A DNA stretch of 35,940 nt from Macrostomum lignano (taxonomy: Eukaryota): NCBI GenBank assembly GCA_002269645.1, contig NIVC01002062.1, forward strand, positions 1 through 35,940, read 5' to 3'. Below the pieces are notes generated by a model. That model searched no databases. It had not been told where the DNA came from and was given only the letters and a program-made list of their open reading frames with translations. A program made the translations under genes and the position numbers. Shown here in pieces: positions 8,301 to 17,300 of this stretch (the stretch's first letter is position 1; each line of letters starts with the position of its first letter).

Positions 8301-11300
8301 TGCCCACCAAGAGACAAAAGTGCCCACCAAGAGTCAGGGGGCGCCCACCAAGAGACAGTGATGCCCACCAAGAGACAGTCATGCCCACCAAGAGACAGTG
8401 ATGTCCACCAAGAGACAGTGATGTCCATCAAGAGACAGTGATGCCCACCAAGAGACAGTGATGCCCACCAAGAGACAGTGATGCGCACCAAGAGACAATG
8501 ATGCCCACCAAGAGACAAAAGTGCCCACCAAGAGTCAGGGGGCGCCCACCAAGAGACAGTGATGCCCACCAAGAGACAAAAGTGCCCACCAAGAGTCAGG
8601 GGGCGCCCACCAAGAGACAGTGATGCCCACCAAGAGACAAAAGTGCCCACCAAGAGTCAGGGGGCGCCCACCAAGAGACAGGGGCGCCTTTCAAGAGATG
8701 AGGGTTTAATTATGCATTAAATCGGCTCTTGACGATAAAGTCGTATCTGTCAAGTATCTCTCACCTCCCGCATCTCCTCGTCCGAGTTGTGCCGCCTCAT
8801 CGAGACCACTGTGAGTCGCTTCTTTGAGTTTGAGCCGCTGCCGCTGCTGCCAGCTGCGCTTTGATGAGCCAGTTGTGTGCGAATCTTGGAATGCAGAGAC
8901 TGAAGCTCCTGGGTTATTTGCGGAGAGGATCAATGTATAACTTTCGGTAAATTTATGCACTGTCAAATGCACTGACAAACAATACAGCTGATAAAAACCT
9001 TTTGATTCCGTTTAATCAGCAAATGCAACTCTTTGCAGCACTTGTGCAGCACTTTCTGGTACTTCTTGTCGCCCATCACTTCGTCCATTGTCAGCCTCTT
9101 TAGACAGGAGTTATCTGCAGTGGGTTGGGTGGATTCGGTTTCTGTGGGAGTGTTACCGGATCTTTCACAGGTGCATTGATTAGTTAGTAATACAGATCTT
9201 TTTAGAAGGGAGGGCACAGTTTACAATCTCTTTCTATCAGAAAACAATTAGTTTCAGGTGCTGAAGTGATCTCATCGGAGTGCTTATAGTGCTCGGGTTG
9301 TGAGTGTGTGTGGGGAATCGAGTGAGTACTTAAGCACACATACTCTTAGAAGCATTTTTCCAGGTATGATAATAAACTGTGTTAATTAGCAAGCACTAAG
9401 TTTCGATTTCGAGACGAAAATGGTGGTTAAGTACACACCACTATCGTGAACTTTAGCTGAAGACCCGTAGCCAGGGAACTTCAGCTGAAGCTCCAGGACC
9501 CCAGATCAGTGTACTTTTGTTGACAACCCCAGGTCAGTGTACTTTTGTACACTGACTTTTGTACTTTTGTACCTCAGGCTCTGCGGTGTATATCAGTGGG
9601 ACTAAGTGGGACTCCGCTACCCCCATATCAGTGTATAATGCATTAGCAAGTTGCTACTAAACTACGTCAAGCCAATGCAAACATTCGCGAAAAGGCGCTC
9701 TGAAGTTTAATTGAATTGGCTATTCTGAGCATCACTGTTACTGTTGTAGCTTAGCTGACACAAATCGAGCATCTATTATTAGAAAGCAATAAGCATAAAA
9801 CTGACAATAAACGCATTGATTTGTGCGTTGACAAGATTAATCCGATCGGGTTACTCAAAGCTATAACAAAGCTGACGCGAACACCGAGAACTTGGGTGCC
9901 GTTAGTGCACAATTTGAAGCCGTGCTCAAAAAAACACTTTTGCCAGCGCTTTTCTTCTCAAGTGATGAAGTCGATTTGAAAAATGAAATATTCGAGTGAA
10001 TAAATAACACAATTAAAATTCAGCAGACACAAAGACTAGAGAACAAAGAAAGAAAGAAGACAGAGTGTGTGTGTGTGTGTGTGTGTGTGTGTGTGTGAAA
10101 AATGAAAATCAAACAAACCAGAGAGCAAGCATTTGTTAACAAAGCTGGAAACTTCAGGCTGTTCAGCTGCTTGGGTAGGCAGCTGCTGCTGCTGCTGCTG
10201 CTGCTGTTGTTGTTTGTTGTTGTTGTTTTGGTGGTACGCGCCCAGGCAGAGCTAAGGGCAGTGTCTGGCCAGCGCTATCAACCCGAGGGGGTCGGCGGAA
10301 ATGCTGCTGATGTCTGTCGTGGGTCCTCCAAGAAGGCGGAGCCTGGTGCCGGCGAGAGCTGGGCAGTCAAGCCAGTGTTCCAGGTCATCGCAGGGATGGC
10401 CGCAGCGGTGACATGCTGGGTCGACGGCCGGGTCGACAATGCTGCGATACGCGTTGAAAAGAGTGCAGTGACCTGAGCGTAAGCGCGCAAGAAGCACCGC
10501 ATCGGCACGGTTGGTGATGGAGTCCTCTTCCAATTGACGGTTGAGAAGCCGGTACGCGTGCCGGGTGCGCTCGTGGCGTATCGGGGGATCGAGGACGGAT
10601 CTTCTGATGACGTTTTTGGCGCTGTGGATGCTGATCTGACTAGCGGGAGACACGAGCGTGGTGGCCTCTTTGGCTGCTTGGTCGGCCAGCTCGTTGCCAG
10701 GAATATTCTGGTGGCCCGGAACCCACTGCCAGGTGATTTCGGCAGATGCAGTAGGTAGTGCAGATCTGATTCTGGGGTTGCCGCTGGCCAGAGCGCGGAG
10801 CATAGATTGGCTGTCTGAGCAGATGTTGGTAGCCGCGGTGAGAGCAGCTTGGTTGATCCAGCCGATGGCGAGAGAGGCGGCGCGAAGCTCCTCTTCGAAC
10901 GAGGATGTGGAGGGCGCGCCGCGCTGTTGAAGAGTCGCCAGGATGATAGGGTGGGCTGGGTCACCGGTCGTGACGATGGCTGAGGCGCCGCCATTGGTCG
11001 TGCCGCCTGATGCCGAGCCGTCGCAGTAGATGGTGATCAGGCCTGGGAGGTGGCGGATAGTGTCGATGGCCGTGGCTGTGCGCGCGGGACCGGGTTCCGG
11101 CAACGCCATGTCGACACGCACGTCGGTAGAGAAAGGGTCCCAAGGCGGCGGACGAGCAGTGCAGATCATGGCGCGCGGCGTGACCGAGCTAGCAATGAGT
11201 GGCAGCAGGTCGGTGACGTGGTTCCGCCAACTGTTCCTGCGTAGCCTGTGCGCTGTGTTTCCAGTGGCGGCAATGCGGCACGGGTGAGAATCCGGGAGGC

Positions 11301-14300: not shown

Positions 14301-17300
14301 GGCAGAGCCAGCTGGGGGCGCCACGATACCGCGAGATGTGGCTGCAGTTGCTGGAGCGGTGGCAGGCCAGAGCGCAACCTTTGGCAGCGCAAGTGAGCGG
14401 AGTAGTGCCAGTGCGGATGGGCCCTGAGCAGCTGTGACAGCGCGTTGGCTGAGACATGCGGGGCTCGGGTGCCGGGAGGTCACGCAGGTGCGCAGCGGAT
14501 GCCGAGTCCAATTCAAGGGGGCGGTGCACAGAGCAGCGCCACGGAGATCGGACAATCTCGGCGCGGTGCATACCGCTGCATTTCTTCTGACAGTGACAGC
14601 GCTCGGAACATTCTGGGACCTCACATGGCAGGCTGTGCATGCCCGTGCGGATTGGGCCGTTGCATGAGTTGCAGGCTGGGCCGGGATTAGTTTCGATGTC
14701 CCCGGCGAGCGTAGTGAGGGCGAGCGCAAAGAGGACGAGGCGGGACAGATAGACAGCAGCAAAACAACCGGTCTCCCTGCCAGCCGTGCCGAAGGCACGC
14801 GAGGGCAGATGGGTTGAAGACCACGACTTAGGAGCTTTGGTGTTAAAACCGGGTCGCTGCTGCTGCTGTTGCTGCTGCTGCTGATGCGGCGACTTATGCT
14901 TGACATGAACTGACAAGAACCTGGTAAGCTTGTGACCTGATAAGGGTAGATAAATTTCAGGCTTGCATTTCTAAAATGGATGCCAATAAAGCAGAACTAC
15001 GCATGGGGCGAAAGCAGTTAAAAATTTGATAAAAAAGTAGCTTCTAACGAAATAGCGCATCAATAGTACATTTAGCTATAGTATAAAGTTTTTTTTAAAA
15101 ATATTGGAAATTATCGGAACTCAATAAAGTGAATAACTTCTTGTTGCCGCTTTTAGAGTTTAGAGAGTAAAATATTTATGACGTCATCGTTTGCAAAGGC
15201 CCCAGACTGCCGGCAATCCCGCGCGGCTGTCCCCTGTCCTTCCTCCGCCCTGCGCAGGGCCCTGCTTGCACTCAACCGCAGGGACATCAGGGCGGTGACC
15301 AGGCCCTCTCAGGTCATGGCTGTTTTACCAGGCATTGTTACCTCCTGGGAAAAAATCCGTAGGAATGCCCATTCTGCCTCCGGTGTCGAGAATGCTTCAT
15401 CTGTGAATGCCCCGCCTGTACTCAGGTCAGGTTGATCTACTTCACCTCGGCCCCAACCCGGACCTCTCTGACATTTTCAGGCCCGAGAATCTCTGCCAGC
15501 TCGTCCGCTACCTAAGGGCTACCGGGCGAGCGACCATCCACCTCCTGGACTCTCCGGAGGGGGACCGCGCTGCGGACACCGGCACCACCGGATCTCCCTG
15601 CGCGACACCGCAGCACCAGCTGCCCGTGGTCGCCAGGGGCTTGCAGAATAGGCAGCAACGCCTCCCCGCTGCATCCGGATGCCCGGAACCCCCCACATCA
15701 GAGTCAAGTAAGAAGGCGTCCTCGTTGTTTCTATTAAAAATTGCTCGTGGTAAATGATCTATACTGGGTAAAAATTGACCTTAAAAATTGGCAAACCATT
15801 GTCATTAACAATAAACTACAGTAGTAGAACCTGATTTTTCCCTTTATGAGCCTCAGGTGAAATGACGCGCTGTGCTTCCTAATAATACGTCGAAATAATG
15901 GCTAAGTTAATAATGGCTAATGCCTAAAGTTACATTTAGAAATTATCGCAAAAACCATCAGGCACAACATGTACGGAGACCTGCTCAAGCATCGCCAGCA
16001 CAGTGAGCGCGCTTTCGAAAGTGACTCACCTGACTGCGGACTCGGCGATGCTTTCGCCGCGGTCGACGACGACGCTGAAGACGTCGCGGTAGAGGATCCG
16101 GCGGCCGCGATCAAGTCGGAGCGGCTCCCGCTGCTGCCGCCAACACGCTGGCAGACGGTGGCACCGCGGACGATCGGGCGAGACGGTGACACCCCGGAGG
16201 AGGTGGACACCGAGGTCGGCGAACCGAACGCAGGGTGGTGAGACTGCGAATCTGACGACAGGTCCGTGTTGGAGGTGGCGGAGGCGGCGGAGGCGGCCGT
16301 GGCGGCGGTCTGCGGTGACAGCAGCAGGTCGTCGTTAATTTGATGAGCGACGGCGCCGTCATCTGGCAAGCCTTCGGGGTGCTGCGGGATCGCATTTTGT
16401 TGGCGATAATGAAAACTTTGGGTGCGCCTAGCAACCTGAGAATATCGTCTGGCGCGCTTACGTTTCGGACCCAAAATTTCTCGTTCTAGGCCGCGTCTTT
16501 CCCAAGCTTCGCGGGTCCTAAGCCTCGCCCTTCCTAGGCCTCGCCATTACCAAGCCTCTCCCTTCTTAAGCCTCTCCCTTCCCAAGCCTCGCTCTTCCCA
16601 AGCCTCGCCCTTCCTAAGCCTTCCATTTCTAAGCCTCTCCCTCCCTCAGCCTCTCCCTTCCTAAGCCTCTCCCTTCCTAAGCCTCTCCCTTCCTAAGCCT
16701 CGGCCTTCCTAAGCCTCTCCCTTCCTAAGCCTCTCCCTTCCTAAGCCTCGGCCTTCCTAAGCCTCTCCCTTCCTAAGCCTCTCCCTTTCTAAGCCTCTCC
16801 CTCCTTAAGCCTCTCCCTCCCTAAGCCTCGCCCTTCCTAAGCCTCTCTCTTCCTAAGCCTCGCCCTTCCTAAGCCTCGCTCTTCCTAAGTCTCTCCCTCC
16901 CTAAGCCTCGCCCTTCCTAAACCTCTCTCTTCCTAAGTCTCTCCTTTCCTAAGCCTCTCCCTTCCTAAGCCTCTCCTTTCCTAAGCCTCTCCCTTCCCAA
17001 GCCTCTCCCTTCCTGAGCCTCGCCCTTCCCAAGCCTCGCCCTTCCCAAGCCTCGCCCTTCCCAAGCCTCGCCCATCTCAAGCCTCGCCCTTCCCAAGCCT
17101 CGCCGTTCCTAAGCCTCCCCCTTCCCAAGCCTCGCCCTTCCCAAGCCTCGCCCTTCCCAAGCCTCGCCCTTCCCAAGCCTCGTCCTTCCCAAGCCTCGTC
17201 CTTCCCAAGCCTCGCCCTTCCCAAGCCTCGTTCTTCCCAAGCCTCGCCCTTCCTAAGCCTCACCCTCTAACATCCCCATCCTTACCATAACGTCGAAGTC

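What the first reader, a model, noticed from the sequence alone, without database searches (positions are those of the whole stretch)
10119..16030. AUG-less LINE inserted sense and in frame into a host poly-Gln exon, with a 2A motif placed to release it: candidate 'host-translation hitchhiking' system
Seen: (1) The element starts at 14856, directly after (CAG)4CAA(CAG)4, and its frame is open from its first base ([11 protein letters not shown]...[10 protein letters not shown]|P). (2) Its first in-frame ATG is at 14640, downstream of the 2A motif and inside PHD1, so the leader and 2A have no start codon of their own. (3) Just upstream are two phase-1 acceptors (14936 and 14909) in the same frame, and the PLC-beta donor at 16030 is phase 1, so that splice fuses PLC-beta in frame to the whole 1534-codon retrotransposon ORF. 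Established: D(V/I)ExNPGP motifs cause co-translational release between Gly and Pro. Inference: the element targets CAG (Gln) codon tracts in expressed exons and borrows the host promoter and start codon. The 2A motif would then free a Pro-initiated PHD-APE-RT-RNase H protein from any host N-terminus. This would explain why such elements keep an N-terminal 2A with nothing of their own upstream. I do not know of this being described, but I cannot search the literature.
Basis: partly seen in the sequence, partly recalled or inferred. Interest (0 to 1): 0.9.

Follow-up and report, generated by a model that had tools for sequence, protein, structure and literature searches.

The report
Start-codon-less CAG-targeting LINE with 2A
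A very young jumping gene of the flatworm Macrostomum lignano inserts only at CAG repeats. It has no start codon ahead of its self-releasing "2A" peptide, so it probably borrows one or starts irregularly, but the proposed fusion to the PLC-beta host gene is unproven and not needed.

Summary
The sequence features are real. A 1534-codon ORF runs on the minus strand from 14856 to the stop at 10254-10252. It has a perfect 2A motif ([10 protein letters not shown]|P, 14709-14677) and APE, RT and RNase H domains. Its first in-frame ATG (14640) lies after the 2A.

The window is from Macrostomum lignano. Four more copies, 99.7-99.8% identical, sit at unrelated loci and change the picture:
- This copy is 5'-truncated. 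The family starts 62-63 nt further upstream, still without any ATG.
- All 5 insertions lie at CAGCAG sites, with 9-16 bp target duplications and a (CAA)n tail.
- In all 5, the ORF is in phase with the upstream CAG (Gln) codons.
- Host context is mixed. One copy is antisense in a kinase exon, one probably antisense, one sense but out of frame in another LINE, and one sense and in frame.
- PLC-beta splices in frame (16030 to 9141/9114) without any poly-Gln exon.

Distant relatives carry their own ATG upstream of the 2A, and N-terminal 2A in single-ORF LINEs is already published.

So this is a new CAG-specific, AUG-less variant of a known LINE type. How translation starts is open: a host AUG, the flatworm spliced-leader AUG, or non-AUG initiation.

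The parts
16030..16436 (-). PLC-beta linker exon (exon C). The acceptor is at about 16436 or 16386, and the donor after 16030 (CAGTCAG|gtgagt) is phase 1.
   Evidence: tblastn places the C2-domain exons just upstream, and the frame runs from ...DFDVM|gtaagg (phase 0) into this exon.
14884..14970 (-). Intronic flank that is open in the element's frame. It holds the two phase-1 AG acceptors (first exon bases 14936 and 14909) and has no in-frame ATG.
14857..14883 (-). Upstream copy of the target: (CAG)4CAA(CAG)4, read as Gln in the element's frame.
10207..14856 (-). The 5'-truncated copy (about 4650 bp) of a young single-ORF LINE. It lacks the first 62-63 nt of the family.
   Evidence: 99.7-99.8% identity to four copies at other loci (L001-L004), each with different flanks.
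14680..14856 (-). ATG-less leader, 59 codons here and 80 in full-length copies, ending in the NPG of the 2A motif.
14677..14709 (-). 2A core [10 protein letters not shown]|P.
   Evidence: It sits at the same position as the 2A of relatives.
14663..14665 (-). First ATG of the element in any frame. It is out of frame and opens a 14-codon uORF.
14638..14640 (-). First in-frame ATG. It lies inside the first conserved zinc module.
14020..14673 (-). Three Cys/His-rich (PHD-like) modules: 14673-14524, 14439-14293 and 14166-14020.
   Evidence: Pfam does not call a PHD domain here.
13276..13914 (-). APE endonuclease domain.
   Evidence: PF03372 at 8.8e-13 and PF14529 at 9.1e-18.
11728..12390 (-). Reverse transcriptase domain.
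   Evidence: PF00078 at 7.4e-31.
10663..11037 (-). RNase H domain.
   Evidence: PF00075 at 3.2e-12.
10360..10413 (-). C-terminal [18 protein letters not shown] Cys/His motif.
10252..10254 (-). Stop codon TAG.
10207..10231 (-). (CAA)n 3' tail.
   Evidence: The same tail is present in all five copies and in distant relatives.
10183..10206 (-). Downstream copy of the target, (CAG)8, forming the target-site duplication.
8999..9141 (-). Next PLC-beta exon (exon D, ...[32 protein letters not shown]). It has phase-1 acceptors at 9141 and 9114.

Best explanation
SHOWN. The feature is a 5'-truncated copy of a very young LINE family of Macrostomum lignano. The family is single-ORF and target-specific. 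Its layout is leader, 2A, three zinc modules, APE, RT, RNase H and a (CAA)n tail. The copy lies in sense orientation inside an intron of PLC-beta. The family integrates by target-primed reverse transcription at CAG repeats. It always has CAG on its sense strand and duplicates 9-16 bp of the target. Full-length copies begin at CCGATCAG... The ORF is open from the first base, is in phase with the upstream CAG (Gln) codons, and has no ATG in any frame for 253 nt.

INFERRED, about 45%. Because the family lacks its own start codon, it is translated from a start codon supplied by upstream RNA on a read-through transcript. Two sources are possible. One is an in-frame host ORF, as the layout at L002 allows (about 20%). 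The other is the AUG that ends the flatworm spliced leader, trans-spliced onto one of the in-frame CAG| acceptors of the target tract (about 25%). The 2A then releases the variable poly-Gln or host N-terminus and frees a Pro-initiated enzyme.

The stated confidence refers to this inferred mechanism. The identity of the element is near certain.
For: Identity:
- Pfam finds APE, RT and RNase H.
- There are 5 copies at 99.7-99.8% identity. The 22 variable sites are all singletons, and 4 of 5 ORFs are intact.
- Target duplications and the (CAA)n tail are present.
- The species is M. lignano.

Target specificity and phase:
- 5 of 5 copies lie at CAGCAG, and 5 of 5 are in the Gln phase.

No start codon:
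- The 4 full-length copies contain no ATG before position 253, which is out of frame, and position 278, which is in frame.

The region upstream of the in-frame ATG still looks coding:
- The 2A is perfect. The conserved CxxCxxxIRxG half of zinc module 1 lies upstream of the Met, which sits at a variable position inside the module.

Upstream supply is possible:
- At L002 the gene model P0062 is 5'-partial and reads from 276 nt upstream through poly-Gln into the element. An ATG with A at -3 lies 136 codons before NPGP.
- The M. lignano spliced leader ends in ATG, and about 30% of genes are trans-spliced at ...CAG| acceptors (PMC8629364).
- Flatworm SL AUGs are known to serve as initiators (Cheng et al. 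2006, as cited in PMC9851317).
- All CAG| sites in the tract are phase-0 acceptors.
- No ribozyme or unusual fold marks the 5' end.
Against: - There are no RNA data: no junction reads, no SL-containing reads and no Ribo-seq.
- 4 of 5 copies have no in-frame ATG in the contiguous upstream DNA, and 2 of 5 lie antisense to host ORFs. Borrowed starts would therefore work at only a minority of sites.
- The CAG tracts do not match the YTNCAG trans-splice motif and mostly lack a pyrimidine tract.
- All four full-length copies share one exact 5' end. That fits an internal promoter and defined start site at least as well as read-through. At L004 the base before CCGATCAG is target T rather than C, which argues against 5' junctions formed by CAG homology.
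- The in-phase relation could be a by-product of precise cleavage.
- Stop-free frames here are compositional. A second frame is also open over the same leader.
- Relatives have their own ATG, so the 2A did not evolve to shed host sequence.
Confidence: 0.45

Rival explanations
1. The element makes its own transcript and starts at a non-AUG codon. It has an internal promoter and its RNA starts at nt 1. Translation begins at a near-cognate codon in the leader. The best candidate is the in-frame ACG in the context ttcggcACGg, 36 codons before NPG|P. The 2A then removes this short leader, as in its relatives. No host sequence is involved.
For: - All four full-length copies have an identical 5' end next to the target duplication.
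- In-frame ACG, CTG and AGG codons are present, and ACG has G at -3 and G at +4.
- The complete lack of AUG over 253 nt is what a scanned leader would show.
- The 2A and zinc module 1 upstream of the Met are conserved.
- Insertion contexts look random with respect to host genes.
Against: - Non-AUG initiation is usually inefficient. Leaky scanning would mostly reach the out-of-frame AUG at nt 253 and the in-frame AUG at nt 278.
- No promoter can be recognised with these tools.
- It does not explain the constant phase with the CAG codons.
Confidence: 0.3
2. The 2A is a recent relic. A master copy recently lost the ancestral leader ATG. Translation now starts at the in-frame AUG (window 14640) and gives the 1462-aa protein that the public annotation predicts. 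That protein lacks the 2A and half of zinc module 1. The leader is simply a 5' UTR.
For: - Gene models P0001 and P0064 start at this Met.
- Three similar zinc modules exist, so loss of the first could be tolerated.
- All copies are under 0.2% diverged, so an untranslated 2A would not yet have decayed.
- The open frame upstream is not statistically informative.
Against: - The Met interrupts a module that is conserved across the clade.
- The first AUG met by scanning is out of frame.
- The family is demonstrably active and all 2A key residues are intact.
Confidence: 0.2
3. In this window PLC-beta exon C (donor 16030) is spliced to 14936 or 14909. PLC-beta is then translated in frame into the leader, 2A and LINE ORF.
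For: - The phases match.
- The acceptor at 14936 has a fair pyrimidine tract (tttatctacccttatcag|).
- The frame is open for 38 codons upstream of the element.
Against: - The phase match and the number of phase-1 AGs are at chance level.
- PLC-beta stays in frame by the direct splice from 16030 to 9141/9114.
- No protein with such a fusion is in the database, and the window's own ORF is not on record as a gene.
- This copy is 5'-truncated, so it is an ordinary insertion product rather than a designed one.
Confidence: 0.05

Closest known systems
2A-bearing single-ORF APE-type non-LTR retrotransposons (Odon et al. 2013, PMC3708506; Luke et al. 2013, PMC3894237): the L1Tc/Ingi, CR1, Crack and Rex1 families
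   Same: [quoted passage not shown]
- No ORF1.
- Cys-rich (PHD-type) modules between the 2A and the APE in some families.
- APE-RT, plus RNase H in Ingi-type elements.
   Different: - Published members and the relatives found here have their own initiator Met and a leader peptide upstream of the 2A. This family has none.
- The published idea for the 2A is down-regulation of ORF2 translation, not removal of foreign N-termini.
- No CAG-repeat specificity has been reported for them.
Microsatellite- and repeat-specific LINEs, such as Dong at (TAA)n, Togen at (TG)n, and Kibi/Koshi/Waldo/Mino (Kojima & Fujiwara 2004, as cited in PMC4640811; the names and targets other than Togen are partly from memory)
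   Same: - Every copy sits in the same simple repeat, in one orientation.
- The flanks are target-derived repeats.
- The 3' tail is related to the target.
- Relatives form head-to-tail arrays.
   Different: - The target here is (CAG)n, down to a single CAGCAG (L004).
- I found no report of a CAG-specific family.
- The ORF is fixed in phase with the repeat, which is a codon repeat common in coding exons.
Co-transcribed, promoter-less site-specific elements with 5' self-cleaving ribozymes (R2 in 28S rDNA; L1Tc Pr77, PMC4035085)
   Same: - Possible dependence on read-through transcription from the target.
- The ORF is open to the 5' junction, and conventional start codons can be missing (for R2, from memory).
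   Different: No HDV-like ribozyme or any Rfam match, and no exceptional fold, at the 5' end. The targets are dispersed CAG tracts, not a multicopy RNA gene.
Flatworm ORFs that take their start codon from the spliced leader (Cheng et al. 2006; slORFs, PMC9851317)
   Same: - The ORF has no AUG of its own.
- It is preceded by in-frame CAG| acceptors.
- It occurs in a species whose SL ends in AUG.
   Different: This has never been reported for a transposable element. No SL-joined read has been examined here, so it remains hypothetical.

Membership tests
APE-type non-LTR retrotransposon (LINE) | APE endonuclease and reverse transcriptase in one ORF | tested here: met
   PF03372/PF14529 and PF00078, plus PF00075 RNase H.
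APE-type non-LTR retrotransposon (LINE) | Several dispersed copies with target-site duplications, a simple-repeat 3' tail and 5' truncation | tested here: met
   five loci, target duplications of 9-16 bp and a (CAA)n tail. The window copy lacks 62-63 nt at its 5' end.
2A-bearing single-ORF LINEs (Odon et al. 2013) | [quoted passage not shown] | tested here: met
   [11 protein letters not shown]. It is aligned with the 2A of 90 relatives.
2A-bearing single-ORF LINEs (Odon et al. 2013) | No ORF1 | tested here: met
   in the full-length copies the target duplication lies directly before the first base of the single ORF.
2A-bearing single-ORF LINEs (Odon et al. 2013) | 2A mediates ribosome skipping | not testable with these tools
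   This needs a reporter assay. The motif and the upstream L-x-AGD context match active 2As.
2A-bearing single-ORF LINEs (Odon et al. 2013) | Own initiator AUG upstream of the 2A | tested here: not met
   no ATG in any frame in the first 253 nt of four full-length copies. Relatives L006 and L007 have verified ATGs.
Ingi/Vingi (I-group) clade | Placement by RT phylogeny against Repbase reference elements | not tested
   No reference set was available. The only evidence is the architecture (2A, APE, RT, RNase H, C-terminal Cys/His motif), which is suggestive.
Target-sequence-specific LINEs | All copies in the same target sequence and the same orientation relative to it | tested here: met
   5 of 5 at CAGCAG, with CAG on the sense strand. 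n=5 only.
Ribozyme-processed co-transcribed LINEs (R2, L1Tc) | HDV-like self-cleaving ribozyme at the 5' end | tested here: not met
   no Rfam match even at E<=10; fold z-score -0.52.
   of 5 copies, one is in frame with a long ORF (L002) and one sits in an intronic open frame (the window). One is sense but out of frame (L001). One is antisense and one probably antisense (L004 and L003). n=5, so power is weak.
   Only indirect evidence: the 5'-partial gene model P0062 at L002 spans flank and element. No reads were available.
SL-AUG-initiated ORFs of flatworms | The species' SL ends in AUG and the acceptor is in frame with the ORF | tested here: met
   (SL ...TTGCATG); every CAG| of the tract is phase 0.
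SL-AUG-initiated ORFs of flatworms | SL-containing reads joined at the site | not testable with these tools
   No access to M. lignano RNA-seq. The acceptors do not fit the YTNCAG motif.

The most novel reading that the evidence does not exclude
This is an active LINE that has given up its own start codon. It uses its integration target as an adaptor. It lands after CAG units in a fixed phase. Any transcript crossing the site then offers either an in-frame poly-Gln host ORF or in-frame CAG| acceptors for the AUG-terminated flatworm spliced leader. The 2A discards whatever was translated upstream. This would be the first transposon known to obtain its initiator codon from the host by design. 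It would also give a function to the unexplained N-terminal position of eukaryotic 2A peptides.
Probability: 0.4. Interest if true: 0.85.

Novelty: new variant of a known kind. Interest (0 to 1): 0.55.

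Why it matters
[quoted passage not shown] The only published idea for LINEs is translational down-regulation (PMC3894237).

This family is demonstrably active. It has five near-identical copies, and four have intact ORFs. Yet it has no AUG before its 2A, and its ORF is locked in phase with a codon repeat at its target. That turns the open question into a directly testable case in a tractable, transgenic model flatworm.

Independently of the mechanism, a CAG/CTG-repeat-specific retrotransposon lands in poly-Gln and poly-Ala coding tracts. One copy here disrupts the last exon of a Src-type kinase gene. It is therefore a source of coding mutations and of annotation artefacts such as fused or truncated gene models.

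Tried and rejected
- Host gene model. A search with concatenated PLC-beta exons returned no M. lignano PLC-beta, so the exon structure around the insertion was derived by hand. The window's own 1462-aa product is not on record.
- 5' ribozyme or structured element. Rfam found nothing at gathering threshold or at E<=10, and the leader folds no better than shuffled sequence.
- The open frame upstream of the Met as evidence of translation. Rejected, because other frames are equally stop-free in this composition, both here and in relatives.
- Phase-1 acceptors as evidence of design. Rejected, because they occur at chance frequency.
- Pfam on the reconstructed empty-site ORFs at L002 and L003 gave nothing significant, so whether those ORFs are real genes is unknown.
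- Pfam does not confirm PHD domains in this ORF.
- No further copies or fragments lie in the window. No further M. lignano proteins with this leader are in the protein collections.
- Literature searches found no AUG-less, CAG-targeting or SL-dependent LINE.

Full report
**What is in the window**

On the minus strand an ORF is open from 14970 to the TAG at 10254-10252. From CGACCCGG at 14856 it spans 1534 codons. It encodes:
- a 59-codon leader;
- a perfect 2A core, [10 protein letters not shown]|P (14709-14677);
- three Cys/His-rich modules (14673-14020);
- an APE endonuclease (13914-13276), a reverse transcriptase (12390-11728) and RNase H (11037-10663);
- a C-terminal Cys/His motif.

The base before 14856 ends (CAG)4CAA(CAG)4. 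The first in-frame ATG is 14640. The only earlier ATG in the element is out of frame, at 14665-14663. After the stop come a 20-nt 3' UTR, a (CAA)n tail ending at 10207, and (CAG)8 at 10206-10183. The element is therefore flanked by CAG repeats on both sides, and its 3' boundary is 10207, not 10119.

**Source and host gene**

The best protein match is a hypothetical protein of Macrostomum lignano. The host gene on the minus strand is a PLC-beta. Its X, Y and C2 exons map at 26.7, 19.1-18.9, 18.7-18.2 and 17.7-17.45 kb.

The next conserved exon (...[16 protein letters not shown]...) has phase-1 acceptors at 9141 and 9114. The host frame is therefore kept without any poly-Gln exon, and the CAG tract with the element can simply be intronic.

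The AGs at 14936 and 14909 are indeed phase 1. But of 15 AGs in the open 114 nt upstream, 12 are phase 0, 2 are phase 1 and 1 is phase 2, which is what chance gives. No fused PLC-beta-LINE protein is on record.

**Other copies decide the anatomy**

The cluster of the matching protein has four members on four contigs. I fetched all four loci. Each holds a copy 99.7-99.8% identical to the window copy over about 4.67 kb, with unrelated flanks. The 22 variable sites are all singletons. Four of the five ORFs are intact, and L004 has a 1-bp deletion. This was a very recent burst.

All four other copies extend 62-63 nt beyond 14856 and share one 5' end, CCGATCAGCCCCATAGGG...CATCGCGG|CGACCCGG. The window copy is therefore 5'-truncated. 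The extension is in frame (...PDQPHRVGAPSGAVKGAASSR-RPGF...) and contains no ATG. Full-length copies have no ATG in any frame for 253 nt. There is no ORF1, because the target duplication abuts the first base.

**Target specificity**

| Locus | Target duplication |
|---|---|
| L001 | (CAG)5C |
| L002 | GCAGCAGCAGC |
| L003 | (CAG)4C |
| L004 | CCTCAGCAGT |
| Window | (CAG)4 |

 The tail is (CAA)n, and the flanking CAGs come from the target. All five insertions are at CAGCAG with CAG on the sense strand. In all five, the ORF is in phase with CAG read as Gln.

Distant relatives (37-40% identity, from metagenome contigs) also end in (CAA)n or (CCA)n(CAA)n. They sit head to tail behind each other's tails.

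**Host context of the five copies**

| Locus | Context |
|---|---|
| L004 | Antisense in the last coding exon of an SH3-SH2-kinase gene (...FEDFFPSTDSGYRA\|TAEV). |
| L003 | A 271-aa ORF on the opposite strand spans the site. |
| L001 | Sense inside the CCHC ORF1 of another LINE. That ORF reads GCA (Ala), and a stop lies 9 codons upstream of the element's first base, in the element's frame. |
| L002 | Sense and in frame with a 289-aa reconstructed ORF (201 codons of it upstream of the site). An ATG with A at -3 lies 136 codons before NPGP. The public gene model (P0062, 5'-partial) fuses flank and element. |
| Window | Sense in an intron. The frame is open for 38 codons upstream, with no ATG. 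|

Insertion is thus not confined to sense, in-frame coding positions. With five loci the test is weak.

**Is the leader translated?**

Stop-free frames are not evidence here, because a second frame is equally open. The stronger argument is comparative. A library-wide search with the N-terminal 340 aa found 281 relatives. Of the 149 listed, 90 carry an N-terminal 2A, often preceded by a conserved GFLxxGxxPAxDxRxLLxxAGD(V/I)ExNPGP leader.

In the alignment, the M. lignano Met at 14640 falls at a variable position inside the conserved first zinc module, CxxCxxxIRxG-x-LxC...CH...CSG...WxC..H. A protein started at that Met would lack the first Cys pair. The 2A and the half-module upstream of the Met are intact in a family that is clearly active. 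That favours initiation upstream of the 2A, but it does not exclude very recent loss of the ATG.

**Where could the start come from?**

The layout at L002 allows it.
2. *The spliced leader.* The M. lignano SL (CGGTCTCTTACTGCGAAGACTCAATTTATTGCATG) ends in ATG. About 30% of genes are trans-spliced at ...CAG| (PMC8629364). Flatworm SL AUGs are documented initiators (Cheng et al. 2006, via PMC9851317). Every CAG| of the target tract, and the element's own GATCAG|CCC, is an in-frame phase-0 acceptor. However, these sites do not fit the YTNCAG motif.
3. *Non-AUG initiation in the leader.* The best candidate is ttcggcACGg, 36 codons before NPG|P.
4. *The in-frame AUG, with a relic 2A.*

No ribozyme or special fold marks the 5' end. 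The identical 5' ends, and the target T (not C) before CCGATCAG at L004, fit a defined RNA 5' end. This counts somewhat against read-through models.

I put borrowed start codons at about 45% (host about 20%, SL about 25%), non-AUG initiation at about 30%, and a relic 2A at about 20%.

**Comparison with what is known**

N-terminal 2A in single-ORF APE LINEs, sometimes followed by PHD modules, is published (PMC3708506, PMC3894237). So the architecture itself is not new, and relatives have their own ATG and leader.

I found no report of any of the following:
- CAG-repeat specificity;
- a fixed phase with the target codon repeat;
- complete absence of a start codon in an active family.

The N-terminal position of eukaryotic 2As is still called unexplained in 2025 (PMC12338488).

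**Verdict**

The feature is a new variant of a known kind. The locus-specific PLC-beta fusion is improbable (about 5%). The family-level puzzle is real and testable with existing M. lignano RNA data.

Noticed in passing
window 3039-3451, 3818-4476, 5384-6704, 7401-8681, 16516-17266, 17675-18321, 19305-20506, 21106-21673, 23697-26356, 26772-27727: The PLC-beta introns are packed with very long micro- and minisatellite arrays. Examples are (TAAC)330, (CTAT)300, (TCTG)102, a 20-mer repeated 134 times and a 50-mer repeated 13 times. Together they cover more than a quarter of the window.
   Followed up: partly
L004 8751-13455 and flanks: This copy is inserted antisense into the last coding exon of an SH3-SH2-tyrosine-kinase (Src-type) gene. 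The annotated 668-aa gene model runs about 260 nt into the element, so the kinase C-terminus is probably altered or mis-annotated.
   Followed up: partly
L001 about 9100-9720 and 14447-15900: The L001 copy is nested in a different two-ORF LINE, which has a CCHC zinc-knuckle ORF1 followed by an APE ORF2. The ORF1 frame shifts across the insertion site.
   Followed up: partly
L005 4589-4667; L006 2776-3001; L007 2464-3001: Relatives at 37-40% identity on metagenome contigs lie head to tail, or directly in front of another LINE. Each next element starts right after a (CAA)n or (CAGCAA)n tail. This suggests that specificity for CAR repeats is a trait of the whole clade.
   Followed up: partly
proteins P0185-P0333: Many N-terminal 2As of this LINE clade share a conserved stretch of about 30 aa upstream of the motif: GFLxxGxxPAxDxRxLLxxAGD(V/I)ExNPGP. 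The M. lignano leader keeps only a possible PGF remnant and carries a hydrophobic insert ([20 protein letters not shown]).
   Followed up: no
P0004 / L005 348: The 'M' that begins some metagenome-predicted relatives is an artefact of a TTG start called by a prokaryotic gene finder. N-termini of such database proteins cannot be trusted without the DNA.
   Followed up: yes
L002 8918-10277: The L002 copy lies about 1.3 kb from the 5' end of a divergently oriented M1-peptidase gene. A bidirectional promoter could drive the read-through transcript implied by gene model P0062.
   Followed up: no
window 15200-15700: A GC-rich block of about 500 bp sits inside the otherwise AT-rich intron just upstream of the element. 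Its origin is unknown, and it does not match the element.
   Followed up: no
window 1361-2500 (-) and 32768-34264 (+): Two long ORFs lie at the window edges. The first has a sub-threshold match to a trematode PH-like domain (E 1.7e-4). The second, of 499 aa, has no Pfam match.
   Followed up: partly
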